Part shown: one piece after another, positions 18,801 to 60,614 of the stretch
Numbering within the stretch: the first letter of the stretch is position 1
How the letters are laid out: each line of letters begins with the position of its first letter
From: Macrostomum lignano
Lineage: Eukaryota
DNA length: 64,000 nt
NCBI GenBank assembly: GCA_002269645.1
Contig: NIVC01000356.1
Location: 592,124-656,123, forward strand
Reading direction: 5' to 3'
The notes under the pieces: model-generated
Seen by the model: only the letters and a program-made list of their open reading frames with translations
The model's database searches: none
What the model was told of the DNA's origin: nothing
Program-made: the position numbers and the translations under genes

Positions 18801-19540
18801 GTGTTGCGGATATTGCGTCTCCAAGTGATCGGAGACTGGGTTTTAGTGTCCGCGATATTAAAGGCGATAAAGCAGTGGTCAGACAGGGAGGGCTCCTCAG
18901 ACCAGACTCTCCACTCCTTGACTCTGTCAAAGAGTCTTGGGGTAACGAGTGTGGCGTCGAGGACCTCGGTCCATCTGCCATTATTAAAGGTAGGAGTGCT
19001 GCCGCGGTTGCAGAGCATGAGGTTTGTGTTAGAGATGAGGGCCAGAAGCTCCTCTCCTCTAGTGTTGGTATCTTTGCTGCCCCAGTGCTTGTGGTGCGCG
19101 TTGAGGTCGCCCCCTAAGCACAGCTCAGCGTTCTGGGACTCGCAGTACTGCGCAAGGCGCAGTAAACTCTCGGGAGCAGGGTCTCTGTCGCCTGGGATAT
19201 AAACCGAGGCAACAAGACACGTACGCGGAGAGAAATGATTAGATTGGATGACGCAAAGGTCTCCATCAGAGAGATCAGTCCTCAGCCAAGCCTGGAGATG
19301 GCTAGCAGCGAGGATAGCCGCTCTAGGGCGGCTGTTCCCCGGGCCACACACATAAAAATCAGAGTAGCCAGAGGGAATGTTGGGCAACTTACCGTTGCGC
19401 ATCCAGGGTTCCTGGATCAGGATGAGGCCTGGCCTGTACAGCTCAGCAATCTTCATCAGATTTACTGACGCAGATACGCAATGCTGTAAATTTATTTGCA
19501 GACAGAATGTCGCTCCTTTGGCAGCGTGGAGCTTAGTCAT
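15801..19540 (-). CDS. LINE ORF2: AP endonuclease, reverse transcriptase, RNase H, C-terminal Zn knuckle; one -1 frameshift near 16189
   Basis: QINLQH, GGDLNAHH, SDH (APE); PGPDG, QGGVLTP, YADD (RT); YTDGS, QNEVLAI, SDSQAA, WVPGH, NELAD (RNH); CSFC...ETAEHFVSIC lies in the 15801..16259 frame. Confidence 0.93.
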
Positions 19541-19579
19541 ACTGTATTAAATGCAATATCTGGCTAGAGCCCAGGGCCA

Positions 19580-21085
19580 TCAAGGAGACTTGGACAACAG
19601 ATCGTCCTCGTCCCAGGCCGCTGGGGCTTGACTGGGAGATGGGAGTTGGTCGACGTCCATGGCCTCCTCACCCCCACCGGCCCCCCCAGCAGAGTCCTCA
19701 GGCTCCGATGACAGGATGGAGGAAGCTTCCTCACCTGCATCTTTACCTTCAGACCCCACCAAGGTGGCCGAGGAGAGCTCGGATTCCGAAGACCCGGCCT
19801 CGTCCTCAACTCCTTCTCCGACTGGCAGGTTTGGTTCCCGGGGCTCGGCCGGAGCCGTTACCGCGGTCGCCGAACTGCTGCTAGCAGAGGGGCGAGATGC
19901 AGCTTTGGCTTTGGGATCGGCTTGCGCCTTTCCTTGGGCCTTAGACTGCGCCCCGCTCTTGCCGGAGATGCCGGGGTTGGCAGTAGCCTTCCCTTTGGCA
20001 GACTTTCCTCGGCGCAACTTGAGCTTGAGGGCACCCAGCTGGAAAGAGGATCCATTAGGGTACCGACTCGCCCAAGTGCTGGAAAGGCCGAGGACAATTG
20101 AGTTGCCCGTCTCCCCCCTGCGGACTTTGCGGTGATACACCAGTCCACTAGCAGGGAGGTCGGGGTTCAGACGCAGTAGGACCCGGCGAATAACGTCTGG
20201 TCCAGCTGCGGTGCTCTTAGCAGGGACGAAAACCACATAGGGTATCGTCTTTGGACGCTGGCCCTCGCGAAGAAAAAGAGCTCCACCAAGGTCAGCATCC
20301 AAGGAGACCGTCGGTAGCCGCTGGAGCAGCCGCCGAGCGTCCTCCTCGCTGCTAGGAGCAATAAGAACGAATGTGCTTCGCAGCACCATCCGCTCAACGC
20401 CGATGGAGATTCCCTCCTCGACAGTCAGCTCAATCAGATAGGAGTCAACAGCACTCCACACTTTTTGAAGCTGATCAGTGGTCCAGTCCTGGTCGCGACC
20501 TTGGATGATCACTCCCGGGATTTTGGCCTTGGCCTTCGCCGCAAAGGTAGCTCCCGAAGGAACCTCCTTGTTGGCAGTGGCCATTTGTTGCGCCGTGGTT
20601 TCGGCCTCAGCAGCCGCGGCAGCAGCTCCAGGGAGCGCCGCCGCTGAACTACTGGAGCTTCCACCGGCCGGCCCGCCTGGTTGCCTTGGGACTCCAGTCG
20701 CTTCAGCATCCATGGTGGACGCCGCCGCTTTGGCCCCCGCAGCTCCCTTCTTGGCCTGCCTTTTGGCGCGTTGTTTAGCGCGTTTGCGCTCAAGCCGAGC
20801 CCGCTGAGCTTCATCGGATCTGCCAGATTTGGCCGGTCCTTTAGGCTCAGAGCTCGCGGTTCCCTTAGATCCACCAGCGGAGCTGGCAGGTCTTAGGGTA
20901 TTTTGAGTTTGGTAGCTCTGGTCGGATCTGCCAGCAGAGCCAGCCGGTCCTTCCTTTGCCACAGTTGAATCAGTCGGTTGGGATCTGCCAGCAGGGCCGG
21001 CCGGTCCTTCGGACTGAGGTTGGGGTTTAGAAGGGTCCCCGTCCCTAGAAATAGCTTGTTTATCCATAGTCGGCTCGAAGGCCAT
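19580..21085 (-). CDS. LINE ORF1 (gag-like, no CCHC knuckle; possibly DUF4780-like)
   Basis: Long ORF ending 39 nt before the ORF2 ATG; low-complexity ends around a globular core (VVFVP...VLLRLNPDL...SFQLG). First ATG at about 21085 (MAFEP). Confidence 0.75.
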   Translation of the reverse strand: MAFEPTMDKQAISRDGDPSKPQPQSEGPAGPAGRSQPTDSTVAKEGPAGSAGRSDQSYQTQNTLRPASSAGGSKGTASSEPKGPAKSGRSDEAQRARLERKRAKQRAKRQAKKGAAGAKAAASTMDAEATGVPRQPGGPAGGSSSSSAAALPGAAAAAAEAETTAQQMATANKEVPSGATFAAKAKAKIPGVIIQGRDQDWTTDQLQKVWSAVDSYLIELTVEEGISIGVERMVLRSTFVLIAPSSEEDARRLLQRLPTVSLDADLGGALFLREGQRPKTIPYVVFVPAKSTAAGPDVIRRVLLRLNPDLPASGLVYHRKVRRGETGNSIVLGLSSTWASRYPNGSSFQLGALKLKLRRGKSAKGKATANPGISGKSGAQSKAQGKAQADPKAKAASRPSASSSSATAVTAPAEPREPNLPVGEGVEDEAGSSESELSSATLVGSEGKDAGEEASSILSSEPEDSAGGAGGGEEAMDVDQLPSPSQAPAAWDEDDLLSKSP

Positions 21086-21317
21086 GATAAAAGGTTGGTG
21101 GGCTACCCTCAAAGGGGCGCGGTACCCACCCGGCCGCTCCACCTGACCGGGCAGTAGGCCAATAGCACCCTCAAGGCTGGCCCGACACCAGGAGGGGGAC
21201 CGCTTGCGACCGGACTACTCCCCGGCCTTCCAGCCCATCGGCACGGTCAACACCTTAGGCATTAGAGAGTACGTTGAGCAGTACCACGGCCTGCAGGTTG
21301 GCGAGCCAGACCCGCAT

Positions 21318-36510: not shown

Positions 36511-38633
36511 CTACTCAGCAAACAGGTTTCTCAGGTCTCGCATGGCGGCGCAGATGCGGTCTCCAAAGCGTCTGGAGCTCTGAAAAATTGAAAAAGCGAA
36601 GCTCTGCATCACATTGTGTTCGATTTATATTGAGCATACTTTACATTTTTTCGATAGCGTTTGTAATGTAGAGATTGCGGATGTGTAGTGTGACGAGATT
36701 GCGGATGTGTAGTGTGACGAGATTGCGGATGTGCAGTGTGACGAGATTGCGGATGTGTAGTGTGACGAGATTGCGGATGTGTAGTGTGACGAGATTGCGG
36801 ATGTGGTGTGAGGAGATTGCGGATGTGGTGTGGCGAGATTTCGGATGTGGTGTGGTGACATTTCGGATGTGGTGTGAGGAGATTGCGGATGTGGTGTGGC
36901 GAGATTTCGGATGTGGTGTGAGGAGATTGCGGATGTGTAGTGTGACGAGATTGCGGATGTGTAGTATGACGAGATTGCGGATGTGTAGTGCGACGAGATT
37001 GCGGATGTGGTGTGAGGAGATTGCGGATGTGGTGTGGCGAGATTTCGGATGTGGTGTGGTGACATTTCGGATGTGGTGTGAGGAGATTGCGGATGTGGTG
37101 TGGCGAGATTTCGGATGTGGTGTGAGGAGATTGCGGATGTGTAGTGTGACGAGATTGCGGATGTGGTGTGAGGAGATTGCGGATGTGGTGTGAGGAGATC
37201 GCGGATGTGGTGTGAGGAGATCGCGGATGTGTAGTGTGAGGAGATTGCGGATGTGGTGTGAAAAGATTGCGGATGTGGTGTGAGGAGATTGCGGATGTGG
37301 TGTGAGAAGATTGCGGATGTGGTGTGAGGAGATCGCGGATGTGGTGTGACAGGCCGCTGCCCCCTTGATGCGCCTACCGTCTGCTGGCAGCTGACCCGGC
37401 TGCTGATGTGAAAGAAGATGGTGTCCTCTCCACCGATGATGTACGACACTCCGTAGCCGTCATAAGAGACCGGGCCAAAGCCGCCGCCGCAGGACACGAG
37501 CTCCGGATGACGCGTCAGGTCCAGCTTCCCGGTCAGACCATGCGGAGTCTGCGAAGTGGACAGCTTCCACTGGCTCTTCAGTGCCTTATCCAAGAATGGT
37601 GAGTAAATCTGGCAGTACTTGGACACCACGTAAAGAGCGAACAGATGTCGGTCAACGCCCCGGCCAGTCATGGCGTCTCGGTACATCGACTGGTGCCGTT
37701 CGGCCGCCGCTCGCACCAGGCTGCGGAGCTCGGCGTTCTGAGGGCGCAGACGTGATCATGAGGTGGATGAGTTTCAACTACATGTATTATCGCTTTATCG
37801 CTTGAGCGCATTCTAAAGAATGGAGACGGGAAAGAGTAGAGACGGGAGAGAGTATTGACGGGAGAGAGTAGAGGCGGTAGAGAGTAGAGACGGGAGAGAG
37901 TAGAGGCGAGAGAGTAGAGACGGGAGAGAGAGTAGAGACGGGAGAGAGAGTAGAGACGGGAGAGAGTAGAGATGGGAGAGAATAGAGATGGGGGTTTAGA
38001 GATTACTTCATACATAAAATCGTAAAATCCTGCTCGCAGTGTGCTCAATGAAGATCCTCTCCGCTTTCTCTCTATACTACTGCCAGTAGAAAAACACGCT
38101 AGAAATGCTACAAAACCAGTTCTCACGGTGGCAATTCCAGCCTCGAAGGCGCGCACAAACTTGCAAGACTCGTTGGTGCAGGAGCGAACGGTCTCGGTGC
38201 GACCCTCGCGGAACAGACGGGTCATCGACGCCTCGTAGGTGAGGCAGAACTGGCCGCCGCTGTCTCTGAAGTAGGCCAGCTGCAGGGCCAACTGGATGAA
38301 CGCGTCCGGGCTCATGGAGCAGGCCTTGATGGCGCCCTTGCCGAATGCGTTATGCACTACCAGGTGCAGTTCGACGTCGTTGATGAGGTTGCGAGCAATC
38401 TGCAGCTGCTGGTCGATGGTTTCGATGCAGGCCTGTCCGAGATCCCACTGCAGACGGACAGGCGCAGGCAGCTCAGCGGCTGGAGATGAGGACGATCGAA
38501 CGACGCAGTGACCATCTGAATTGTAGCAGCTGCCGCTCTGGTCATAGAGGATGGTCACCTCCTCCCAGATCTGGCCGAGGATCGGCGCATCAGCCCTACA
38601 CGGTTTTGCAGATTCAGGTTAAATTTGGTCGTG

Positions 38634-41882: not shown

Positions 41883-44850
41883 GTTTGTCTCTCTGTTATA
41901 GCATAGGTCGTATAGATTCGATGCTTGACATTGAAGTTATCAAAGTCGCACACTTGTATTTGTCATAGCGGTCATAAATAAAAAATATGCTTCATCGCAT
42001 GAAGTGGGAAGGTATTTGCAGATCTTTTGTTTTGAAAAGTTTAGAAACAAGGTATAATAATAGACAGACTAAAGAGAGTATGCTACCGCGCACACAAAGA
42101 AACTGCATGCTGACATTTTTCAAAAGTCGTCAGTCTACGGTCGCCTCAAGCAGGATAAGATCTAAACAAAAACACGCAAATGATGACAACGGTAGCGACC
42201 ACACCGAATAGCATCAGGAATCTCTCGATAGCTCGGGCCGCCACGGCCCAGTCCGAATCGACCGAAGCTTTGCCGCTGTCATCTTTGTCCAGCTTGTCCG
42301 GAGCGGTACCGCCGGTGCCTGACGGATTCACCCGGCTTCGGCACAGCAGGCGGCCCAGGAAGTTTACTAAGACTGCGCGCGTGCAATTCGACATGCGAGC
42401 GGTCGCCGGCCTGAAGTGAAGGCACAGCGTCAGCGAAGTCAGAAGCAGCGACACGGTGGACAGCACCATGGCAGCCGTGATGAACAGGGCGATGGCCGGA
42501 AGTTCCGTCGATTTCGGCAATATGCCATCAAGCAGCAGCAGGAATACGGTGTAGCTGAGCATGATGGTGATGCCCAGTCCCAGCTTCTCACCGGACTCAA
42601 GAGGCACAAAGTACACAAGCAACTGGAGCAGAGCCAGCAGAAGCAGTGGAATGATGACGTTAACGATGTAATATGTTGAGACACGTTTTATCTCTATTGA
42701 CAGTCGGAAAATCTTTGCCAAAAACTCGATTTGGTCTCCAAAGATTTTGTACTTCTCCCTTCGCACTTTAAGAGTGACTCTAGTCAAAGTCCATTCGCTG
42801 TTTTTTCTATAAATTGCAGTCAAATTGTACTGAGATTTTGGTACCACAGGTCGAACGAAGTCGTTATAATCCATGTCATTCAAGAAAAGGTCAAGATCGC
42901 AGATGTGATAGTCGAATGGAAAATCTGCCATAACGAAGTTGCAATGGAATTCAAACTCCCTTCGCCAATAGGATTTCACTTCAGTCACATTGGGACTAAT
43001 TGAAGTCAGTCCGACATAGTTCTGCGGCACTAAGGCTTGCTCGTCGCCATTGCCGTTGTATAGCATAATGTCGGGATACCAGGCCTGCGCAGCGTCCCAA
43101 CGGGTGAAGCCGATGCCACCGAAATCGGCCGGGTTCCAAACTAGTCGCTCCTCCTCTCTGGCTGTCTCGATGTAAAGCGCGACCGTGATGCTTTGCTGCG
43201 CCGTGTCCACCGACACGATATGGCTGAGCAGGACGTTCAGCGATACGTTGAGTATAGTGGCAGTTCTGTTGATTCTCGGGTAGAGAGTAGGACTGAAGCC
43301 GGGAATATTCTTCAGGTGCTGCAGCAAGTTCGCTTCAAAGTCTTTTGTTGCCGAAGCAGTTGCCAAAAGAAACAGCAGCAGGGATGTTGTGAGCGCCAGC
43401 ATTGCTCTTAGTTACCAACTAGTCTCTCTTCAGCTCATGTGACAATGATAGGCTCTACTCAATCATTATATCGCTAACAAAATGTAAATATTTGTGGGAT
43501 CACGGATCATACGTTGACTCAAACAGATGGATTTTCTGCTCTAAAATTCGTTTCTCTCTGTCAACATTCGATCGCATCTAGGCTAATAAGCTGTCATTAG
43601 AGTTAAAAGCAAATATGCACTTGCATTAGTCAATGCTAAGTGAGGGACAAGTTCACTTTTTCAGCCTCTGGCTAATGCGGCTAGTAAAAGTTTCACTGCA
43701 TTGAGAGGCCTTTCCTGCAGGTTCTGACATCAATGACCGTAACTTATTCTGGCTTTTACCCAATATTGCGAGAAACATGATAATAATTATGGTAATGGAC
43801 CCACTAGGTTGTGGACCCCTTGACGCAACGCCTTCGGCAATGCTGCACCCATTCCCGCTGACTCCTGAACATTCACCCTATGTTGGCTCTCATGGGGTGA
43901 ATCCCACGACAACCACTTGCCAATTTTCGTGCCCGAAAGCCCCAAATGAATGTGGCCGGCTACGTAATTGACGAACAAGAGGTCGTGACCTTCGGAGAGA
44001 GTCAAGACGCCTTTACCGCTGAGCTGCTCCGCCTCTTGCAAGGAACGTACATGATGTATGTCACGATTATCACTCCGCGCTAAGCCTCAGGTAGACAATC
44101 CATGAGCAACATACTGAATGGCCCAATATTTAACTACCGGTACAATGAAGTACCTTTCAATAGGTACACGTTAGCAGCCATTTTCTAGCAGCATTTTTAA
44201 AAGCAAACTTAATGTCTACTCATGCAACATCGAAAAGTCGCCATCACAGAAGATTCCGTCTGTGGTCGCCACTTTTGAGAGGGCAGGTAAAGTCGAATTG
44301 ACAGACGAATTAAGGAATGAAATGGGGGAGCAATGTGCGAGGGTTGGACGGATTAAGGCTACCCCGATCAGTTTTCTCGTATCTTCTATTTCAGAATGGT
44401 CCAAGAGAAATCGCTCACTGGCGCATAGAGTGGCAACTTTTCAATGTTGCTGAGTGTAGCTGTAAGTTTTAGGAAGTGAGGGGGTGGGCGCTAAGATTCG
44501 TGCATTAAACACTCTGCTGAAGAAACCGTCTGCATCTGGAACAGCTCACACAAACAAGTTGCTGGGACTCACCGTTGCACCGCTCTGTTGAGAGGTGCCG
44601 CAAAGCCAAACGACAGATCGCTGCCCAGCATGGCCGCGGAGATCATGAGCAGCATGACGAGCCACAGGCTGCTCGGCTTGGCCGGATAGACGCCATCGCG
44701 TAGACGGTTGCGCAGACGAGCGCAGCGCTTTTTGTAAGCGCGCAGGCCGGACTGCCAGACCTGACGAAGGGCGGCTCGGTCGAATTCGATGCGCACACCG
44801 CGGTTGGTGACGTTGAGAGTGAAGACGACAGCTTGGTGAGCTTCCGCCAT
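36511..44850 (-). CDS. CPT1: Carnitine O-palmitoyltransferase 1, 8 coding exons: 44850-44573, 41595-41229 (or 41220), 40967-40701, 40085-39591, 38772-38747, 38595-38127, 37737-37378, 36579-36511
   Basis: MAEAHQAV N-terminus; [36 protein letters not shown] (catalytic His), [52 protein letters not shown]. Splice phases are mutually consistent. Confidence 0.95.
36670..37348. repeat. Intronic 24-bp repeat (gagattgcggatgtgtagtgtgac)n, CPT1 intron 7
   Basis: Directly visible. Confidence 0.95.
37835..37990. repeat. Purine-rich simple repeat, CPT1 intron 6
   Basis: (gagagtagagacgg)n variants. Confidence 0.85.
38635..38720. repeat. (TAC)n microsatellite, CPT1 intron 5
   Basis: Directly visible. Confidence 0.95.
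39010..39425. repeat. (cagacat)-derived simple repeat, CPT1 intron 4
   Basis: Directly visible. Confidence 0.92.
40134..40318 (-). mobile_element. tRNA-derived SINE copy with CORE-like segment
   Basis: ggggctgTAGCCTAGTGGttagagcg...GGTTCGAATC...gcaaggcacttaactctgcattgcttcagttcacccagctgtaaaatggg; homologous to 11536-11765. Confidence 0.85.
40366..40685. repeat. 22-bp tandem repeat (ccagcttagagacactgtgact)n, CPT1 intron 3
   Basis: Directly visible. Confidence 0.95.
41755..41885. repeat. (TCTG)n microsatellite
   Basis: Directly visible. Confidence 0.95.
42146..43402 (-). CDS. Intronless Cys-loop ligand-gated ion channel subunit (nAChR/5-HT3-like, non-alpha), nested in CPT1 intron 1
   Basis: Signal peptide; WYPDIMLYN; Cys-loop C-x13-C ([15 protein letters not shown]); YYIVNVIIP (M1); [13 protein letters not shown] (M2); AARAIER (M4). 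Confidence 0.92.
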   Translation of the reverse strand: MLALTTSLLLFLLATASATKDFEANLLQHLKNIPGFSPTLYPRINRTATILNVSLNVLLSHIVSVDTAQQSITVALYIETAREEERLVWNPADFGGIGFTRWDAAQAWYPDIMLYNGNGDEQALVPQNYVGLTSISPNVTEVKSYWRREFEFHCNFVMADFPFDYHICDLDLFLNDMDYNDFVRPVVPKSQYNLTAIYRKNSEWTLTRVTLKVRREKYKIFGDQIEFLAKIFRLSIEIKRVSTYYIVNVIIPLLLLALLQLLVYFVPLESGEKLGLGITIMLSYTVFLLLLDGILPKSTELPAIALFITAAMVLSTVSLLLTSLTLCLHFRPATARMSNCTRAVLVNFLGRLLCRSRVNPSGTGGTAPDKLDKDDSGKASVDSDWAVAARAIERFLMLFGVVATVVIICVFLFRSYPA

Positions 44851-47115: not shown

Positions 47116-47867
47116 AGGAGTCAGTTTTCGAAATTGTTATTGAATTTTCGAGCTCATTGAAATCATACTTCTTAAACATCGAATTTCATGGCGTAAAGAT
47201 GAAAATGATCAAGCTATAGTTTGTTTGTCTTTTTATCAACTTTCTTCCCTTTCCGTAAATTTCTATGCATAAGGCAAGACCAAATCTATTGCTGAGAATG
47301 GGAATACTCAACTTGGTTGGCTTACTATTGATATCAAGTTTGCTGACTTGTTACAAAACCAATAGTGAGGTATATACATAAACAATTAAGTATAAGTGGG
47401 TCACTCTAATTTGAGGGGACGAGGGGACGAGGGGACGAGGGGACGATTGATTTCTAAGTTTAGATTATGCAATATAACAATCGCAACAATCAACATATAC
47501 CTTAAGTTCGAAAATCGTTTGTACTGCTTCTGCTGTAAAAGAAATAAATTCCAAAGTAAAATTGATTCTGCTTAAACTCCGAGGTAGAGTAAAAAGTTCA
47601 GATCGAATGAGTTGGAAATACACTTGGATAGAAACGTAACATCAACGTATTCGGATAATATGTGCAAAGGCCCAGAGCTAGAGCTCGACAATTTTGTATA
47701 ATAAAGTATTTGCATTAGCGCATTTCTGATTATTTATTCTGGTTATTTTGATTAATCAGCAAGAATGTAAGCTGGAAAGAAAAACGATCTATAAATTAGG
47801 CATCTTTTGTAGACGTCTTCTTCTTCTTCTTCTCCGTTTATCGCCTTGCGGCGTGGAGTGAACAGCG

Positions 47868-50800
47868 TCAGGCTTCACCGCAAGTGCGTTTGTGTCGCGC
47901 CATGTTTGTCGCCGATAACGTTCTTCCGCACTTGTCGCATTCTGCTGTCTTCCTTCGGTATTTTCTTGCTCTTCTCTTGTTCTCCTCCATCTCCGGTGGA
48001 TTGTGGTGTTGTTCTTTACATGTCTTTCTGTGCCTCGCTAGGTTCGATTTTACGATTGTGCTTCCACATTGCTGACATTTTACTCTTGACGCATCTATTT
48101 CCGTCTCGCCTTGGCACACCTTCTCATGGTTTGCCAGGGTCGCTTCCTGTCGGAACTCCTTGTCGCATTTGTGGCATCTGAATTTCACCGGCTCTTTAAA
48201 CACGCGATGCATCCTCTTTTGGTGGATGGTTAGTCCGCCCTTGCTTTTACACACTTTGCCGCAGAGTTCGTATTCGCATTTGAAGCCATCTCCAACCTCT
48301 CTCGGGTTCGTTTTTACGTGGTACCGTTCTTGACTTCGTTCGATCAGGCTGTTGTTACTGTCCGTCTTGGCCTTTTTTCCTTGCACTCTCTCCCACTCTT
48401 GTAGGTGTACAGTCCGCTGGTGTACTACGTTCCGCCAGTGTTTCCTGTCTAGAACGTGGCGTTCGATGTCTTGCGGTTCCATACCGGCTTCCCGGATGAG
48501 GCGCTTCCAGTAGGATATGGTGTTGTTTTTCCGTTTTTTGCGCTTAGGGATCCTTTCCAGGCCTCTGTACCACCCTAATACGGCTTGCTTTATTTGTCTG
48601 TCGTCTTCCATCCGTAGGACGTGGCCAATCCTTTTTAGGTGACTTTTCTCAATCTTTGTTCTTAATGACACAACACCTAGTTCGTTGCGGATATCTTGCA
48701 TATTTACTCCTAGGCTTTCCATTTCGCGCAGCGGTTCCATTCTCTTGTTGGACCAAATGTTGCGGTATGTTTTGTCGATGAACTGTTGCATTTTCTTGAT
48801 TTCGCCGAGCAGGAACGGGCGGGTGTTCGCATGGAACAGGAGTACACTTTCCACGCACGCCTCGACCACTTTAGCTTGTGTGGTCTTTTTCAGGCGGCAT
48901 CGATGGAACCTTTTCCTGATCGCATTCCACGCTTTGGCGGCTCTCTGGATTCTTTGCTGTGTGTCGTATCTCCTATCCATCCACGACCCTAGGATGCGAG
49001 TTTTACCTCCGACGGATGTTCCTAGGGCCATCTCCTCCTGTTTCTCGTCATTTGTCAGTTCTTCGAACTTCTTCATATTCTCTTTGGTCGTTGTTAGGCT
49101 TCTCGTCAGTTCTCTGCCATTGCCTAGGATGGTGGTGTCGTCTGCAAAGAGCGATGAGGTCCACTTGACCGTTCGCATCTCCGAGTTGTACTGGTTGATT
49201 CTCTGAGGTGGCAAGGAGTGTCCAGGTAAGTACTTCCATTCCACCCCGCAGCTTAATCCTCTGCTGGCCGCTTCTGTCTCCCGAGTTTCTTCCGCTTTCC
49301 TGATGCTCGCCTGGTGGTAGATGTTAAATAATATCGGGGAAGTTGGGCATCCCTCGCGTAAGCCTCGCTCGGGTAGCCATGTTTCGCTTGATTTCTCCTT
49401 GCCTTGCACTTTATACGCGGTATGTTCATGCAGGTCTTTCAGTTTTTCGATCGTCTCTTGCGGCATCTTGTACGCTTGGAGGATTCCCCACAGGATCGGC
49501 TTGCACACTCTCGGATATGCCTTACGGAGGTCTAGGAGGATTGCCGTTTCTGTGTCTTCGATGTTGCAGTCTCCTGATGCTCTTTTTGTTTCCAGGTACT
49601 CGGCAATGTCCTCGTGCATCCTGGTGAATATCTGTGCGTTGTCCGCCGTCGATCTTCCACTTCGGAAGCCGTTCTGGTTGTCATCTAGCGCTCCTATCAC
49701 TTCTGCCCAATTCCGGATTCTGGTAGCCAGAATGCGGGCTAGTATTCTGCTGAGCATAGGTAATAGGCAGATTCCTCTGTAGTTATTCATGTCTGCTCGG
49801 TCTCCCTTCTTGAATAATGGAATAATGAGTCCAATTTTCTCGTTGTCATTCCATTTGTGCGCTCGCTCTTCAAACAGAAAGCGGATCCTTGCATACAGTT
49901 CTTTACGTACTGCGTCTGGGGCGATTCTAATGTATCTGATACGAAGTTCGTCCTCCCCGGGACTTCGGTCTTTCATTTCTTTAATGGCTGCTTCTATTTC
50001 AAGGTCCGTTGGGACTGTCGTCAGTTGTGTTCTTGTCTTTTCCGTATCTTCCTGTTCCTTCATGGTTTTGATTGATCTGATCAGTTCGGCTGTTTCGGTT
50101 TCCGGGTTTTCCAATCTAGTCCCTTGGATTCTTTCCAAATGGTTCTTGAAGTCATCTTCGTCAAAGTTGGTGTCTGTTCCGCTGTTGTTCCACTTTCCTC
50201 GCTTGTCCAACATCCTTAATTTCTCATAGACCACTGCGATCTGGCCTCTATCCGCGGCATTTCTGCATTCCTCAGCGATTGCGTCCCACCAGTTTTCCTC
50301 CCATTCCGCGAGCTTCTTTTTTATCTTTTTTCGGATAGTTGTAGTCGCTAGGCGGGCTAGGGTCGTCGCCGCCGAGGTGGGGTCTTCTCTGACGCATGCG
50401 TTGCGATGGGCCAGCGTTTCTGCCAGCTCTCTTTGTTGTGCCTCGTGTTCGTCCAGGTGGGGGGCCATCCACGGGTTCGTTACTCGTGTCACCGTGCCGC
50501 ATACGTGCCTTGCACTGTCGATGATTGAGTTTTGAACGTCTGTCCATTTCATGTCTGTGAGGTTCCTGTCCTGCTTCTCTCTTAGTTCTTCGAATCTTGT
50601 TAGTATTTCTTTTTTTAACTCAGATGCCTTGTTCTCGTCGTGGAGTTTCCTCCAGTCGATGTTCTTCCGCCTGCGTCTCGTCTGGTCCTTGACGTACTTG
50701 TTCCGTGTCCAGCCCCGAATTATGACGGTTTTGGGCAGGTGGTCCGACAAGTTGCACTTGTTGTGGTTCTTTATCGTTTTGACCAGGCGGTGTCTGTCCT

Positions 50801-51920
50801 GCGCGCGAGTTATGAAGCCGTCTATCTCATACCACGTGCCGGTGCTTGGATTTCTCCAGGTTCCCCGGTTTTTTGACTTGTGGAACGAGTTGATCCAGGC
50901 TAGATCATTTGTCACTAACCAGTTTGCGAGGTCTTCGCCCTGCTGGTTGGTCAGTGCTAAGCCAAACTTTCCTCGATGTTGCGCGTCTGTGCTTTCAAAT
51001 TTGCCAATCTGTGCGTTCATGTCACCGCCAATGATGATTGGTTTGTTCTTTCTTTCATTATGAATGTAACGTTCCAGGGTGTTTCTGAGCTCTGCTAGTT
51101 CCGTTTCGTAGTCCGGAGTGCCTCTAACTGGGCAGTACACGCTGATCAATGTCGCGTCGTATATTTCTATCATGATCGCTCTGTTCGTAATCTTCTTTTT
51201 TGATCCGCTGTCCTTCCACGTCTGGTACAATTCCTGGTTTAGGATGATGCCTGTTTTCTTGCCGTGAATCAGGAATGAATTTTGTTTCGGTTGGTGGTAA
51301 CTTCTTATTCCGTCTGACGGTGCCGATAACTCCGAGATGAGGGCTACCTCCCAATTCTCACTCATAATCTTTTTTGCGATCTCTCCAAAACGCGTGCCGA
51401 ACACGTTTGCCCGCTGGACATTCCATGTTGTTATTCTCAGCTCGTTGTTTAATGTTTCTCTGCGTTTGTTAATCTTCTTCGTTCTTCTTGTTCCACGGCG
51501 TCGGGTTCTTCTGATTAGTCTGCTTTTCTTCTCTTTTTGGGTTTTCGGTCGTTTTGTGCTTTTTCTTGGGTTTTCGGATTCTTTCTTTGGTCTTTCCTTC
51601 CTGTTTGGTCCTGGGTTCTTCTCTACTGTCGTCAGCTGTGCTTTCACTTCCGCCGACCTTTGTTTCCGGCTTGGTCTTGTGCGGCTCTGCTGTTCCTCTA
51701 GCTCTCTACCTTTGTGCTGTCCACTGGTTTTTGCCTGGTTAATCTCGGTACCCAGGTCGGCTACTTCTGGGTACCACGAGTGAAAAGGGCCGGTGTCGTC
51801 GTACTGGCTTCCGCCAGTGGCTTCGATCCATGGTCCCTTCCGTTTGCTCCCTTCTTTGCCAAGACTTTTTCGGGTCTTGTCCACTGGCCACCTCGTGAAG
51901 GTGGGGGAACAATCGGCCAG
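47868..51920 (-). CDS. RTE polyprotein: 2A-like peptide, AP endonuclease, reverse transcriptase, four C-terminal Zn fingers (one C2H2, three C2HC)
   Basis: VEKNPGP; ITTWNV, GGDMNA, EIDGF, LSDH (APE); SPGED, NYRGICLL, DLRKAY, REGCPTSP, FADD (RT); IGHVLRMEDDR and DRKHWR (RTE C-terminus). No stops. Confidence 0.92.
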   Translation of the reverse strand: MADCSPTFTRWPVDKTRKSLGKEGSKRKGPWIEATGGSQYDDTGPFHSWYPEVADLGTEINQAKTSGQHKGRELEEQQSRTRPSRKQRSAEVKAQLTTVEKNPGPNRKERPKKESENPRKSTKRPKTQKEKKSRLIRRTRRRGTRRTKKINKRRETLNNELRITTWNVQRANVFGTRFGEIAKKIMSENWEVALISELSAPSDGIRSYHQPKQNSFLIHGKKTGIILNQELYQTWKDSGSKKKITNRAIMIEIYDATLISVYCPVRGTPDYETELAELRNTLERYIHNERKNKPIIIGGDMNAQIGKFESTDAQHRGKFGLALTNQQGEDLANWLVTNDLAWINSFHKSKNRGTWRNPSTGTWYEIDGFITRAQDRHRLVKTIKNHNKCNLSDHLPKTVIIRGWTRNKYVKDQTRRRRKNIDWRKLHDENKASELKKEILTRFEELREKQDRNLTDMKWTDVQNSIIDSARHVCGTVTRVTNPWMAPHLDEHEAQQRELAETLAHRNACVREDPTSAATTLARLATTTIRKKIKKKLAEWEENWWDAIAEECRNAADRGQIAVVYEKLRMLDKRGKWNNSGTDTNFDEDDFKNHLERIQGTRLENPETETAELIRSIKTMKEQEDTEKTRTQLTTVPTDLEIEAAIKEMKDRSPGEDELRIRYIRIAPDAVRKELYARIRFLFEERAHKWNDNEKIGLIIPLFKKGDRADMNNYRGICLLPMLSRILARILATRIRNWAEVIGALDDNQNGFRSGRSTADNAQIFTRMHEDIAEYLETKRASGDCNIEDTETAILLDLRKAYPRVCKPILWGILQAYKMPQETIEKLKDLHEHTAYKVQGKEKSSETWLPERGLREGCPTSPILFNIYHQASIRKAEETRETEAASRGLSCGVEWKYLPGHSLPPQRINQYNSEMRTVKWTSSLFADDTTILGNGRELTRSLTTTKENMKKFEELTNDEKQEEMALGTSVGGKTRILGSWMDRRYDTQQRIQRAAKAWNAIRKRFHRCRLKKTTQAKVVEACVESVLLFHANTRPFLLGEIKKMQQFIDKTYRNIWSNKRMEPLREMESLGVNMQDIRNELGVVSLRTKIEKSHLKRIGHVLRMEDDRQIKQAVLGWYRGLERIPKRKKRKNNTISYWKRLIREAGMEPQDIERHVLDRKHWRNVVHQRTVHLQEWERVQGKKAKTDSNNSLIERSQERYHVKTNPREVGDGFKCEYELCGKVCKSKGGLTIHQKRMHRVFKEPVKFRCHKCDKEFRQEATLANHEKVCQGETEIDASRVKCQQCGSTIVKSNLARHRKTCKEQHHNPPEMEENKRRARKYRRKTAECDKCGRTLSATNMARHKRTCGEA

Positions 51921-51921
51921 C
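51846..51921 (-). ncRNA. Compact HDV-like self-cleaving ribozyme candidate at the RTE 5' end
   Basis: P1 GCUGGCC/GGCCAGU; P2 GUUCCC/GGGAGC; P3 ACC/GGU; L3 UUCACGA; P1.1 GG; P4 CAAGAC/GUCUUG; J4/2 CAAA. Confidence 0.82.
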
Positions 51922-51999
51922 TTTTGTAGACGTCCCCTCGTCCCATCGTCCCATCGTCCCCTCAAATTAGAGTGACCCCAATTAAGTAATTTCTGATTC

Positions 52000-54900
52000 T
52001 GCAGTCTGAGAAAGTTAATAATTTGCTTCGTTACTTCTTAGTAAAAAGTGACTATATGTTTAGATAAAATTTAACGTCAAACGTTTGACTAAATTTTATT
52101 ACAAAGCACTTTTGTTTCGCTACTTCTTTGTTATTCTTTAATGAGGCGCGATAATATCAAATAATCGTTTTCTAAGAACGCAAGAATAGAATGTAGCAAG
52201 ATTATGAATTAATAGAATTTGGTAACCGCTGCGGTCTGACTTCTGAAATATTCTCATTCAAGAATTTTCAACCCTGCTCTGAATTAATGAATTAGCCTAT
52301 CAAAAGTTGAGGATTTCGATTCATATTTTTCTAAGTTTGATTTATTAGCAACAATATTCAATAACCAATAATTCGCCATGGAGTTTTATAATCAATTATC
52401 AAAAACACTCAATGAATATTTTGTTTTCTATTGAGATCTAGGCCTAGTGTAATTCGTAAGTAAAGTCCATTATTTTTTGTTTATTGAAAGTATTAAGCTA
52501 GACCTGAATCTAAGAGTAAATTATTGAACTTACTCTTGCATCTTGCATCAATAAGATATCTAAATTGGGTTCTGGTTCTTTAAATATTGTATCTAATTTT
52601 GATCAAGAACTGCACTTAGTTTATCATTTCATTTTTATATTTTTATAATTTAATTTTATGAGTTGTTAATTTATGTTTTAAATATATTTTACTATCTCAA
52701 TTTGCATATTATTTCATTTAATCTTTCAAAAAATTATGCTTAAGAGAAGACAATGGTATAATTATAAATAAGACTTCTTTTTTAGTAGTTTAAGTCTTAA
52801 TTATAGCACAATAATGACAATATATTATAAAGAGATATAAAAAAGAGATAGATATTTTTACATTTAGGTTTTTCAATGCATGCTAAATTTGCTAACATAA
52901 AAAATGAAGTTATTGGAATATTAAAAATCTTTTATCTTTTATTTGATATGGCCCTATAAGCTTTTGACAGCAAAAGTTTTGTACATGAAATAAAATATGT
53001 TAATTAAACTAGGTTTAGATCCCAAAAATTGAATAGAATCATTGTTGTGTATGGACTTTTGGTTTAGTTTAGCAAATGCACTAATGCTTCCCTTCTTTTG
53101 TCTATAGTCTAGGGTACAATATTTTATTTTTTAAGAGCCAAAGGCTAACAGTATTACAAAGGGCAAGCAAGACATGCGCCAGCTAGAGGCAAATAAAGCT
53201 TGTGAACAGCTCGTATTTTAAATAATGCTTCTTTGACTTGACTTTGATGTCAGATGGTAGCCTGGAGGCAATAGTCGGTATAAAAGCAGAAGAAGAGGAC
53301 ATAATAATCCTAGATCATTACAACGCTATATTAATTTTACTTTGCTTTTGATTATTTATTTATTCAAAAATAAATAAATAATAAATAAAATTCTTATATC
53401 TAAAGCTCAGCAGACCAATCAATTGATCAATCAATTGACTGGCCAGGTTTAATATGAATCTCCTTTTTATTACTCTAAAAAAATTAAAACTCAAAAGACA
53501 ATGCATCATTTTTGCCCTTCTCTAAATTTCCTACAAATTAAACAAGAAAACATATTTATTTATTTGACTTAAGTAGTGGCATATAGAGTTAGCCCTACCA
53601 AAAGCAAAAGGGTTGCATGTTAAAGAGAATTCCTAATAGTACTTTTGTATATGACCTTGGATTAAAATTTGGCAGGGATATAAATTGAGATTTTGGTTGA
53701 CTAAAAGTCAATAAATTTATTCAAATTATGTATATATGCTAGGTAATTATGTATATCATTGCTATTACTTATATATAATATATATATAAACTGTATTTGC
53801 ATAGAAATTGCTTAGTTTTTGCTTATTCAAAGCAAGTGATTTTTTAGGCTGCTAGTGTTTGTAATAGTATTTTCTACCATAGAAGACAAAAAATTATTTA
53901 AAATATTTAACCATTTTTAATCAGTTGATATCTTAGCTTGTATCTTTCTATACATAGTTATATTAATGCAAAACATTTAGCCTAGTCTAATTGATTCAAG
54001 AATGAAGCATGATGCATGTATAAGCATAATGCAAGAATGATAGGAAACAATATCAACAAACGATGTCAATGTTAGAATTTTAGCTATGATACACTTGTCT
54101 TTGGTCTAGTAGAGTGTTTAATTATAATTTGGACAAAGCCTTTTACATGAATCTAGTTGGCTATCTAAGTGATAGTAGAATAGTAAAATGAATTTAATTG
54201 CAAATAAATATAACTGAATATAATATAGTGCAATATAATATGAAGTATATTAGTTTAATGGTACATTAATACCCATGCTTTAAAGGCATTAATGGGAAAA
54301 TCAGAGGGTGCCATTAGGTGCCCAAGGATTTCTCATTAACGCCTGCAAAGCATGGGTATTACTATTATTGTGCCATAGACATTTGTGTCCTTGACAAAGT
54401 AGGACAAAATAATTGGGCATTAAATGTCATTAACTGCCTATTAAATTGCATTAAAGTAAGTTTGACATAGACAATTGGGTGTTAAATGTCATTAACTGCC
54501 TGCTAATTTGCATTAAAGTAAGTTTAAAGCATTAAAGTCCTGCAAGCAGGCTTAAATGCAGTCTATGGCATTAAAAGGCAAGAATAAGTTCCAAAGGTCA
54601 TGGTACAATGTTTCCTTATAACACAGGTTTAGCAAAATATTTTTTAAATATGAAACTAATGATTCTTATCTATTGGTATATTTTAAAATGTCTTTGATCT
54701 TATATTCAACAAATAGTCTAGAAGCTTAGTTTTGTAAATTATTTTAGCTATATTTTAAATTGATAAAAACAATATGATAGTACTAAAATTGTATTATTCA
54801 TATTATCTATATCAATTTGTAAGTTTTATATTATTACATTCTCAATTAAAACATTGCTGTGTACCTCATAAGTTCAAGTAGGTTCCTTATAATTTGCAAG

Positions 54901-59471: not shown

Positions 59472-60614
59472 CTACTTAAAGTGCTTTGCTAATACCCGTG
59501 CTGTCTCTTTATCTAGATCTGATTCAGCCAACCACTGACCTCTCGAGTCGGGCATTCCCTCCCACTTGACAAAATATCGCCTGCCCTTCTTCCCCATACG
59601 CTCAACACGCTCGACCCGATCAATTTTAACAACCTCCGCCTCAGGTTCAGCCACTAGAAGCAGTTCACCTTGGTTGAATCGACCCTCCAACACTGTCGAA
59701 TCGTCCTCGGGGTCTAACAGACCATAAGACGGTGGCTTCGTAGAATACACCCGATGAATTCGATACACCCTATTACTCCATGTCGTTGTGTAACCCTTCT
59801 CAAATTTTCCCTTTTGACGTGCAAGTCGTACCCAATCACCAACCTTAAAACGCGGAATAGGCCTCACATCGTCGCCATACAACTCCTCCCACACCATGCC
59901 CTGCAGATGGCCATCCGCACTCACATCAATGGGGCTACGACCATTTAAACTGCGGTGTGGAGAGTTATTCAACGCAAGCTCTAATTTTGGTAGAACATCA
60001 AACCACCGGGCCAGATTTCGAGTCCGAAATAGTCGTAGTAATCGCTCCTTCACGGTGCGTATCAATCGCTCAGCCATGCTCGCTTTGTAGGTACTCTGAC
60101 TTACGAAAAATCGTACGCCCTCACGCTTTAACATCGACTGAGTTTCTCGCCCAAGAAACTCTCGACCAGCATCGCCTTGTAAGTACAGCGGTTTAAACCC
60201 CGTGCGGAATATCTCATACAATACACGGCTCACCTCACTTGGCTTCTTCGTCTTCAAAGCTCTCAAGCGAGCCAACCTAGTGAAACAGTCGACTAATACG
60301 AGGATGTACCTGTAACCACGGTTTTCGTCCTGATATTGCGGTAAGTCTGCCAAATCAATCTGCATTTGAAATTTTGCAACGGGCGGTAGTTGTATTTTCG
60401 GAGTTTTGAACTTCCGATTCGACTTCTGGAACAGATGTATCTCCTTCGTCCTACGCACCCACTTGTCAACAACAGCCTTGGCTTTTTTTTGCGTTAACTC
60501 CGGATACCTCCGCCTCAAAACTCGTATAAATTGCTTCTTATTACCACTAAACGCAGTAGGGCGTTCCAAGTCGAAAAATGCCACGTCCAGAAACTTAAAA
60601 AAAATCGCTTCCAT
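59472..60614 (-). CDS. Retroviral-type (rve) integrase with C-terminal chromodomain-like module
   Basis: QIDLAD, LQGDAGREF, AERLIRTVK (DDE); FKVGD.VR, KFEKGYT..WS; YFVKWEG......W. Confidence 0.92.
   Translation of the reverse strand: MEAIFFKFLDVAFFDLERPTAFSGNKKQFIRVLRRRYPELTQKKAKAVVDKWVRRTKEIHLFQKSNRKFKTPKIQLPPVAKFQMQIDLADLPQYQDENRGYRYILVLVDCFTRLARLRALKTKKPSEVSRVLYEIFRTGFKPLYLQGDAGREFLGRETQSMLKREGVRFFVSQSTYKASMAERLIRTVKERLLRLFRTRNLARWFDVLPKLELALNNSPHRSLNGRSPIDVSADGHLQGMVWEELYGDDVRPIPRFKVGDWVRLARQKGKFEKGYTTTWSNRVYRIHRVYSTKPPSYGLLDPEDDSTVLEGRFNQGELLLVAEPEAEVVKIDRVERVERMGKKGRRYFVKWEGMPDSRGQWLAESDLDKETARVLAKHFK

What the first reader, a model, noticed from the sequence alone, without database searches (positions are those of the whole stretch)
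51846..51921. Compact HDV-like ribozyme whose G1 coincides with the TSD-defined 5' end of an RTE retrotransposon
Seen: minus strand GCUGGCC-GAUU-GUUCCCCC-ACC-UUCACGA-GGU-GGCCAGU-GG-A-CAAGAC-CCGAAAAA-GUCUUG-G-CAAA-GAA-GGGAGC. It gives a 7-bp P1 with G1.U wobble, 3-bp P3, an L3 one base from human CPEB3 (UUCACGU), GG for P1.1, 6-bp P4, catalytic C in CAAA and 6-bp P2. G1 (51921) is the boundary base of the TSD, which was found independently. Established: HDV-like ribozymes process the 5' ends of R2, RTE, Baggins and L1Tc elements. Inference: this copy is full length and was released from a read-through transcript by self-cleavage.
Basis: partly seen in the sequence, partly recalled or inferred. 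Interest (0 to 1): 0.88.

Follow-up and report, generated by a model that had tools for sequence, protein, structure and literature searches.

The report
Self-cleaving ribozyme heading a jumping gene
The first 78 bases of an intact 4.1-kb LINE retrotransposon fold into a hepatitis-delta-virus-type self-cleaving ribozyme, conserved with compensating base changes in distant relatives; this is a clean new example of a known way for such elements to trim their own RNA.

Summary
Minus strand 51921-51844 reads as reported and fits a full HDV-type nested double pseudoknot: P1 7 bp with G1.U, P2 6-8 bp, P3 3 bp, P1.1, P4 6 bp, and C51858 in CAAA.

- **Not chance:** a generic descriptor hits the window only here, against 8 hits in 654 shuffled windows.
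- **Independent model:** Rfam's HDV-F-prausnitzii model matches exactly 51846-51921, but at 31.6 bits, below its threshold of 44.
- **Conserved fold:** fourteen related elements (36-45% protein identity, from marine metagenomes) carry the same fold at their 5' ends. 98.9% of helix cells pair and 14 of 19 pairs change on both sides, while GG and CAAA stay fixed.
- **5' end:** G1 is the last base of an exact 14-bp target-site duplication, so the boundary is uncertain by one base.
- **Intact copy:** the element has one unbroken reading frame encoding APE, RT and C2H2 fingers, a 35-nt 3'UTR and a (GAA)5 tail.
- **Added finding:** the reading frame runs through the ribozyme to a conserved 2A-like NPGP motif.

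The 'RTE' label is unverified; the ribozyme, 2A and C2H2 combination resembles L1Tc. Cleavage itself is inferred. This is a new member of a known kind.

The parts
51844..51921 (-). HDV-like ribozyme, 78 nt (76 nt with a 6-bp P2); nt 1 = 51921
   Evidence: Sequence; only descriptor hit in the window; Rfam RF02682 on 51846-51921; covariation in relatives
51915..51921 (-). P1 5' strand GCUGGCC; predicted cleavage is 5' of G51921
   Evidence: Pairs with 51883-51889 (GGCCAGU), 7 bp including G1.U; 4 of 6 aligned P1 pairs change on both sides
51905..51912 (-).
   Evidence: Pairs with 51844-51851 GGGAGCAA; 4 of 4 aligned P2 pairs change on both sides
51890..51902 (-). P3 (ACC/GGU) closing L3 UUCACGA; L3 nt 2-3 (UC) form P1.1
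   Evidence: the L3 C is invariant in 14 lineages and 2 of 3 P3 pairs covary
51883..51889 (-). P1 3' strand GGCCAGU
51881..51882 (-). GG of P1.1
   Evidence: Invariant in all 15 family ribozymes
51860..51879 (-). P4 hairpin CAAGAC-CCGAAAAA-GUCUUG
   Evidence: Predicted in the MFE fold; 4 of 4 aligned P4 pairs covary
51855..51858 (-). J4/2 CAAA; C51858 is the predicted catalytic cytosine
   Evidence: CAAA in 14 of 15 family ribozymes, CAAG in L006; aligns with the GCUAAG core of RF02682
51844..51851 (-). P2 3' strand GGGAGCAA
51747..51775 (-). Second conserved hairpin, GGUACCCAG-aaguagccgac-CUGGGUACC, with a UAGCC loop
   Evidence: Same position and loop motif, with different stems, in 12 of 15 lineages; present in the MFE fold
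51606..51638 (-). 2A-like motif QLTTVEKNPGP, in frame with the ribozyme and with APE-RT
   Evidence: NPGP nearly invariant at this position in the family; the frame is open from ribozyme nt 2
47868..51920 (-). Single uninterrupted reading frame from ribozyme nt 2 to the stop codon (the mechanical ORF runs up to 51965)
   Evidence: Pfam: APE at about 51428-50733, RT at 49808-49029, C2H2 at 48182-48120
47818..47867 (-). 35-nt 3'UTR plus (GAA)5 tail (47832-47818)
   Evidence: relatives have equally short UTRs with lineage-specific microsatellite tails
51921..51934 (.). 5' copy of the target-site duplication (minus strand GACGUCUACAAAAG); its last base is G1
   Evidence: family D3
47804..47817 (.). 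3' copy of the target-site duplication
   Evidence: family D3

Best explanation
The first 78 nt of this non-LTR retrotransposon RNA fold into an HDV-type nested double pseudoknot.

1. In a transcript that starts upstream of a source copy, the fold places the phosphate 5' of G1 next to C64 (51858) of J4/2 and a bound Mg2+. The RNA cuts itself there.
2. Host sequence is discarded, and the element RNA starts exactly at G1 with a 5'-OH.
3. That RNA is translated without a cap. The frame is open from the first bases of the ribozyme, and several relatives carry an in-frame AUG at ribozyme nt 9 or 11.
4. A 2A-like NPGP motif then separates the leader peptide, encoded by the structured RNA, from the APE-RT-zinc-finger protein.
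5. The protein nicks a target and primes reverse transcription from the (GAA)n tail. It copies the RNA to G1, giving this full-length insertion with a 14-bp duplication.

Shown here: the sequence, its fit to the fold, covariation, fixed core bases, coincidence with element 5' ends, and the open frame. Inferred: cleavage itself, its chemistry, read-through transcription, cap-independent initiation and 2A activity.
For: - **Sequence and helices:**
- **Chance test:** the window's only descriptor hit, against 0.012 per shuffled window.
- **Rfam:** RF02682 aligns full length on the same coordinates. Relatives hit HDV models at the predicted places: L015 147-232 to RF00094 at 29.4 bits and L005 50-140 to RF02682 at 28.7 bits.
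- **Own model:** a model built from the window sequence alone finds L001 2618-2688 (E=1.5e-4) and L021 302-372 (E=1.8e-3).
- **Covariation in 14 distinct lineages:** 98.9% of cells pair against 67.5% when shuffled (0 of 500). The covariation score is 0.881 against 0.221, pairing falls to 33-42% when partners are slid, and 14 of 19 pairs change on both sides.
- **Descriptor control:** a permissive family descriptor parses 12 of 15 real sequences and 0 of 6000 shuffles.
- **Fixed core:** GG, the L3 C and CAAA do not vary.
- **5' ends:** G1 is the duplication boundary. Six independent contigs of one relative diverge exactly 5' of predicted nt 1, and L003 and L004 diverge within one base of it.
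- **Open frame:** 2 stops in the 2A frame against 111 in the other two frames, over 15 lineages.
- **Precedent:** PMC6765202 and PMC3185411.
Against: - No cleavage data exist.
- All Rfam matches fall below gathering scores.
- The nested MFE fold (-25.3 kcal/mol) uses an extended 7-bp P3 that competes with P1. The plain MFE z-score is -0.3.
- At this insertion site the G-rich upstream repeat can pair with the P2 5' strand.
- The base at -1 is A, which is less favourable than U or C in HDV (PMC1874588).
- J1/2 is only 2 nt if P2 forms all 8 bp.
- The duplication leaves a one-base ambiguity at the 5' end.
- The covariation alignment was built by hand to fit the structure.
- This copy has no in-frame AUG before the 2A-like motif.
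Confidence: 0.85

Rival explanations
1. The 5' end is set by transcription initiation at +1 from an internal promoter, as reported for L1Tc Pr77. The conserved fold would then serve mainly translation or protein binding, with little or no role for cleavage.
For: L1Tc's first 77 nt act as both promoter and ribozyme (PMC3185411). The frame open through the fold, and a second conserved hairpin, show the 5' region has roles beyond cleavage.
Against: The bases that stay fixed while the helices covary are the catalytic-core ones: the J4/2 C, the P1.1 GG and the L3 C. A structure needed only for translation would not have to keep an HDV active site.
Confidence: 0.1
2. The ribozyme family is real, but this copy is catalytically or translationally dead. 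It would then be a recent fossil whose fold records only its parent's processing.
For: This copy lacks the in-ribozyme AUG seen in L001 and L014 and has no in-frame AUG before the APE domain. Its upstream flank can trap the P2 strand.
Against: All helices and core bases are intact, the 1365-codon frame is unbroken and the duplication is perfect. Four other lineages (L003, L015, L016, L020) also lack an AUG inside the ribozyme yet keep the frame open from its first bases.
Confidence: 0.25
3. The fold is a chance match to a permissive motif.
For: All Rfam scores are below gathering, and the MFE is not better than shuffles.
Against: Shuffles, covariation and position at element 5' ends in about 14 lineages.
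Confidence: 0.01

Closest known systems
L1Tc ribozyme (L1TcRz / Pr77) of the Trypanosoma cruzi L1Tc LINE, Ingi clade (PMC3185411)
   Same: An HDV-like ribozyme of about 77 nt occupies exactly the first bases of the element and cleaves at +1. The element has one ORF with an N-terminal 2A, then APE and RT. From my own knowledge, L1Tc also ends in C2H2 fingers.
   Different: L1Tc has an RNase H domain and a poly(A) tail. Here Pfam finds no RNase H and the tail is (GAA)n. The host is an animal, not a kinetoplastid. Promoter activity was not tested.
HDV-like ribozymes of R2, R4, R6, SART, Baggins and RTE elements (Ruminski et al. 2011 and Eickbush & Eickbush 2010, as summarised in PMC6765202)
   Same: The ribozyme at the 5' terminus frees the element RNA from a co-transcript. 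It is also proposed to promote cap-independent translation of a frame lacking a conventional start.
   Different: This element family is new and has no named relatives. It carries a 2A-like motif and C-terminal C2H2 fingers. Whether it belongs to the RTE clade was not established.
Rfam RF02682, HDV ribozyme from Faecalibacterium prausnitzii (best curated model match)
   Same: A compact minimal architecture that aligns almost without gaps over all 74 model positions.
   Different: The score of 31.6 bits is below the threshold of 44. That family is bacterial and sits upstream of glmM (PMC6765202), so the similarity is in fold and core, not in ancestry shown here.
Human CPEB3 ribozyme
   Same: From memory, L3 (UUCACGA) differs by one base from the CPEB3 L3, and the fold is the same.
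   Different: RF00622 does not match at E<=10. CPEB3 is intronic and not part of a transposon.
2A-like sequences at the N-terminus of single-ORF APE-type LINEs (Odon et al. 2013, PMC3708506)
   Same: An NPGP motif lies just upstream of the APE domain in an element without ORF1.
   Different: That paper reports Rex1, Crack, L2, L2A, CR1 and Ingi clades and does not mention ribozymes. Here the 2A frame begins inside a ribozyme. The window's motif is TVEKNPGP, with T where the canonical motif has D.

Membership tests
HDV-like self-cleaving ribozymes | Nested double pseudoknot: P1 of 6-7 bp starting at the cleavage site, P2, 3-bp P3, P1.1 and P4 (PMC4908430) | tested here: met
   Sequence; descriptor hit unique in the window
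HDV-like self-cleaving ribozymes | Catalytic cytosine in J4/2, with core bases in L3 and P1.1 | tested here: met
   C51858 lies in CAAA. GG and the L3 C are invariant, and CAAA is kept in 14 of 15 relatives
HDV-like self-cleaving ribozymes | Helices supported by compensatory changes | tested here: met
   14 of 19 pairs change on both sides; 98.9% paired against 67.5% shuffled and 33-42% slid. The alignment was fitted by hand.
HDV-like self-cleaving ribozymes | Score at or above the gathering threshold of a curated Rfam HDV-type model | tested here: not met
   RF02682 31.6 against 44; drz-agam-1 16.7 against 37. These models describe particular subfamilies, not the whole class.
HDV-like self-cleaving ribozymes | Mg2+-dependent self-scission 5' of nt 1, giving a 5'-OH and a 2',3'-cyclic phosphate | not testable with these tools
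   Indirect only: element 5' ends coincide with predicted nt 1
RTE clade of non-LTR retrotransposons | RT phylogeny placing the element inside RTE | not testable with these tools
   No labelled references were available. The closest named protein is Branchiostoma Hypp3340 at 23% identity.
RTE clade of non-LTR retrotransposons | Single long ORF with N-terminal APE then RT, no substantial ORF1 | tested here: met
RTE clade of non-LTR retrotransposons | Very short 3'UTR ending in short tandem repeats (from my own knowledge of RTE and Rex3) | tested here: met
   35-nt UTR plus (GAA)5; the same design in all relatives. Not exclusive to RTE.
RTE clade of non-LTR retrotransposons | Classical RTE has no 2A and no C-terminal zinc fingers | tested here: inconclusive
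   The element has both. Odon et al. list 2A in Rex1, Crack, L2, L2A, CR1 and Ingi, not RTE. Absence from one survey is not a definition.
Ingi / L1Tc-like LINEs | HDV-like ribozyme at +1, N-terminal 2A, APE, RT, C-terminal C2H2 | tested here: met
   L1Tc features from PMC3185411
Ingi / L1Tc-like LINEs | RNase H domain after RT | tested here: not met
   No RNase_H hit at E<=0.01. The other LINE in the window does have one.
Ingi / L1Tc-like LINEs | Poly(A) tail | tested here: not met
   The tail is (GAA)5
2A 'ribosome-skipping' peptides | C-terminal motif D(V/I)ExNPGP in a suitable upstream context | tested here: inconclusive
   The window has TVEKNPGP. L001 has DVEKNPGP, L014 has DIETNPGP and most others have TIHPNPGP. 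Activity was not tested.

The most novel reading that the evidence does not exclude
In this LINE family the ribozyme is also the start of the coding region. After self-cleavage the uncapped, 5'-OH RNA would be translated from within or next to the pseudoknot, at an AUG at nt 9 or 11 in some lineages and at a non-AUG codon in this copy. The conserved 2A-like site would exist to discard the peptide that the structured 5' RNA (ribozyme plus UAGCC hairpin) is forced to encode. Ribozyme, initiation platform and 2A would then form one functional module.
Probability: 0.35. Interest if true: 0.65.

Novelty: new member of a known kind. Interest (0 to 1): 0.45.

Why it matters
HDV-like ribozymes at LINE 5' ends are established, so the mechanism is not new. 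The value lies in the material.
- This is a previously undescribed element family, seen otherwise only in marine metagenome assemblies.
- It supplies about 14 divergent natural variants of a compact ribozyme, useful for structure-function work.
- It shows selection for a reading frame that runs through a ribozyme into a 2A-like site. That makes the proposed link between ribozyme processing and cap-independent translation directly testable.
- It also warns that curated Rfam thresholds miss genuine HDV-like ribozymes.

Tried and rejected
- **MAFFT on the raw ribozymes (A2):** structurally wrong and not used.
- **Model from the window sequence alone (R1):** reached only L001 and L021.
- **Three-sequence model (R2), filters off:** ranked L014, L006 and L020 highest among non-training hits, at the expected places but only at E 0.4-1.4. 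I therefore built a structure-guided core alignment by hand.
- **Plain MFE folding:** uninformative for a pseudoknot.
- **Clade assignment by named homologues:** failed in two large searches. PDB gives only weak L1 ORF2p and C2H2 matches.
- **Host organism:** unresolved. The nAChR-like ORF has its best named hits at 25-29% identity.
- **Other copies in the window:** none by blastn or tblastn.
- **Missing sources:** Ruminski 2011 and Kojima 2011 are not held, and the P0013 contig has no DNA.
- **CPEB3 L3 sequence:** not found in the papers held.
- **My first permissive descriptor:** gave two spurious hits in the window (63647, 57205), so I tightened it.

Full report
**Observation.** The helices are:
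- P1: GCUGGCC with GGCCAGU, 7 bp, with G1.U at the base.
- P3: ACC with GGU, closing L3 UUCACGA.
- P1.1: GG directly after P1.
- P4: CAAGAC with GUCUUG.
- J4/2: CAAA.
- P2: GUUCCC with GGGAGC, extendable to 8 bp (UUGUUCCC with GGGAGCAA), which puts the 3' end at 51844.

**Is it more than chance?** A generic HDV descriptor hits both strands of the window only at 51921. It requires G1, a 7-bp P1, a 3-bp P3, an L3 of 7-8 nt with C at position 3, GG, P4 of at least 4 bp, CNRA, and P2 of at least 5 bp. The same descriptor gives 8 hits in 654 dinucleotide-shuffled windows, and a stricter form gives 2 in 654. I wrote both descriptors after seeing the candidate.

The Rfam gathering scan of the window is empty. 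A permissive scan of 51750-52020 aligns RF02682 (HDV-F-prausnitzii) end to end on exactly 51846-51921, at 31.6 bits against a threshold of 44. The E-value is 2.3e-4 for that stretch, about 0.05 when scaled to the window. drz-agam-1 follows at 16.7 bits. Plain MFE folding cannot represent the pseudoknot (z = -0.3). The four helices sum to about -26 kcal/mol. The best nested fold reaches -25.3 and uses an extended P3 that competes with P1.

**The element.**
- One reading frame runs on the minus strand from upstream of the ribozyme to 47868 (1365 codons). Pfam finds an APE endonuclease, an RT and a C2H2 finger, and no RNase H. PDB matches to CTCF and ZNF568 confirm the C-terminal fingers.
- A 35-nt 3'UTR and a (GAA)5 tail follow.
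- An exact 14-nt direct repeat flanks the element: 47804-47817 equals 51921-51934. G1 is the last base of that repeat, so the 5' end is 51921 or 51920.
- The insertion lies inside a roughly 464-bp MITE-like element with 48-nt inverted termini.
- No other copy or relative of the element is in the window.

**Relatives.** The protein has ten relatives at 36-45% identity, all from ENA or Logan metagenome assemblies. Most sit on 4.1-5.9-kb contigs that look like whole elements. A profile search added one more family member (P0012) and only distant LINE proteins beyond it, with no informative names. I fetched their DNA, plus ten JGI metagenome loci.

The same fold sits at the 5' end of 14 further loci, upstream of the APE domain. 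Independent checks agree:
- A model built from the window sequence alone finds L001 2618-2688 (E=1.5e-4) and L021 302-372 (E=1.8e-3).
- Rfam places HDV_ribozyme on L015 147-232 (29.4 bits) and HDV-F-prausnitzii on L005 50-140 (28.7 bits), both below threshold.
- A permissive family descriptor parses 12 of 15 real ribozymes and 0 of 6000 shuffles.

**Covariation.** I built a structure-guided alignment by hand and checked every string against the loci. The fixed-length core blocks (43 nt, no artificial letters) aligned without gaps in MAFFT. On 14 distinct sequences:
- 98.9% of helix cells pair, against 67.5 ± 2.0% after column shuffling (0 of 500).
- The covariation score is 0.881, against 0.221.
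- Pairing falls to 33-42% when partners are slid by 1-3 columns.
- 14 of 19 pairs change on both sides: P1 4 of 6, P2 4 of 4, P3 2 of 3, P4 4 of 4.
- The P1.1 GG and the L3 C never vary, and CAAA is kept in all but one.

This pattern, variable helices around a fixed core, is what a working ribozyme shows. The caveat is that the alignment was fitted to the structure. P1 is 7 bp in the window, L001, L021, L014 and L006, and 6 bp elsewhere. Both lengths are normal for the class (PMC4908430).

**5' ends.** Six independent contigs encoding the same protein (L008-L013) have unrelated upstream flanks. They become identical exactly at the predicted first base of P1, which is A in five and G in one. 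L003 and L004 diverge within one base of predicted nt 1. With the duplication in the window, this shows element RNAs of this family begin at the ribozyme's first base.

**Beyond the finding: the frame runs through the ribozyme.** A 2A-like motif (L-x-T-[IV]-[HE]-x-NPGP) is nearly invariant just upstream of the APE domain. The window has QLTTVEKNPGP at 51638-51606.
- The frame carrying this motif is open back to nt 1-3 of the ribozyme in 13 of 15 lineages. Across the 15 there are 2 stops in that frame and 111 in the other two.
- Six lineages have an in-frame AUG inside the ribozyme, at nt 9 or 11, in a conserved CAAUGG or UCAUGA context.
- The window has GAUUGU there and no in-frame AUG before the APE domain.
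- A second hairpin with a UAGCC loop lies 150-175 nt into the element in 12 of 15 lineages, with covarying stems. In the window it is at 51775-51747.

**Mechanism and comparison.** The best reading is the established one. The ribozyme trims a co-transcript so that the element RNA starts at +1, and it may also support cap-independent translation (PMC6765202). The closest architectural match is L1Tc: a 77-nt ribozyme at +1, then 2A, APE and RT (PMC3185411). The window element differs from L1Tc in lacking RNase H and in having a microsatellite tail instead of poly(A).

The short 3'UTR and lineage-specific microsatellite tails fit RTE, but also fit other clades. 2A-like motifs have been reported for Rex1, Crack, L2, L2A, CR1 and Ingi, not for RTE (PMC3708506). 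I could not place the RT phylogenetically, so 'RTE' stays unverified.

[quoted passage not shown] It is a new member of a known kind. Cleavage, read-through transcription, the mode of initiation and 2A activity are all inferred.

Noticed in passing
window 51747-51775 (-): A second conserved RNA hairpin lies about 150 nt into the element (GGUACCCAG-aaguagccgac-CUGGGUACC). The UAGCC(A/G)A loop sits at the same distance from the 5' end in 12 of 15 lineages, with quite different stems, often followed by UAAAA. It may bind a protein or act in translation.
   Followed up: partly
window 51606-51920 (-) and the 5' regions of L001-L027: The frame carrying the 2A-like NPGP motif is open from ribozyme nt 1-3: 2 stops against 111 in the other two frames over 15 lineages. 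Six lineages have an in-frame AUG inside the ribozyme at nt 9 or 11; the window copy has none.
   Followed up: yes
L002 83-162, L005 50-138, L006 261-352, L007 340-422, L027 ~46-135: One subfamily carries a covarying hairpin inserted inside L3 (NCC + hairpin + A), with P1, P2, P4, GG and CAAA intact. L005 still matches Rfam HDV-F-prausnitzii at 28.7 bits. An insertion in the catalytic L3 loop is unusual for this class, to my knowledge.
   Followed up: partly
L001 2232-2558: About 390 nt upstream of the LINE, L001 holds another HDV-like fold with a large P4 (Rfam RF02682 22.5 bits; R1 hit). It heads a roughly 330-nt non-coding element that ends in (GACAA)3 and lies within (GAT)n. It may be a ribozyme-headed SINE-like partner.
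   Followed up: partly
window 47398-47445 and 51931-51978: 48-nt inverted repeats, 96% complementary, with (GGGGACGA)n subterminal repeats delimit a roughly 464-bp MITE-like element into which the LINE inserted. The G-rich repeat just upstream can pair with the ribozyme's P2 strand.
   Followed up: partly
3' ends and 5' flanks of L001-L016; window 47818-47832: Each lineage has its own microsatellite tail: GAA, CGA, GGAA, GAT, GACAA, GGAT, CCAGA, GTCAA or GTCAT. Many copies lie directly beside (GAT)n or (GAA)n arrays. This suggests either microsatellite targeting or seeding of microsatellites by the tails.
   Followed up: no
window 16118-21142 (-): A second, unrelated LINE: a 1140-aa ORF with APE, RT and RNase H, preceded by a 520-aa ORF. 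No HDV-like hit by Rfam or by my descriptor.
   Followed up: no
window 42146-43402 (-), 36625-37716 (-), 59472-60614 (-): An uninterrupted 418-aa Cys-loop receptor ORF (best named relatives 25-29% identical; 67% to a metaclust protein), a carnitine acyltransferase fragment, and a gypsy-type integrase with a chromodomain. The host is an animal from a poorly sampled lineage.
   Followed up: partly
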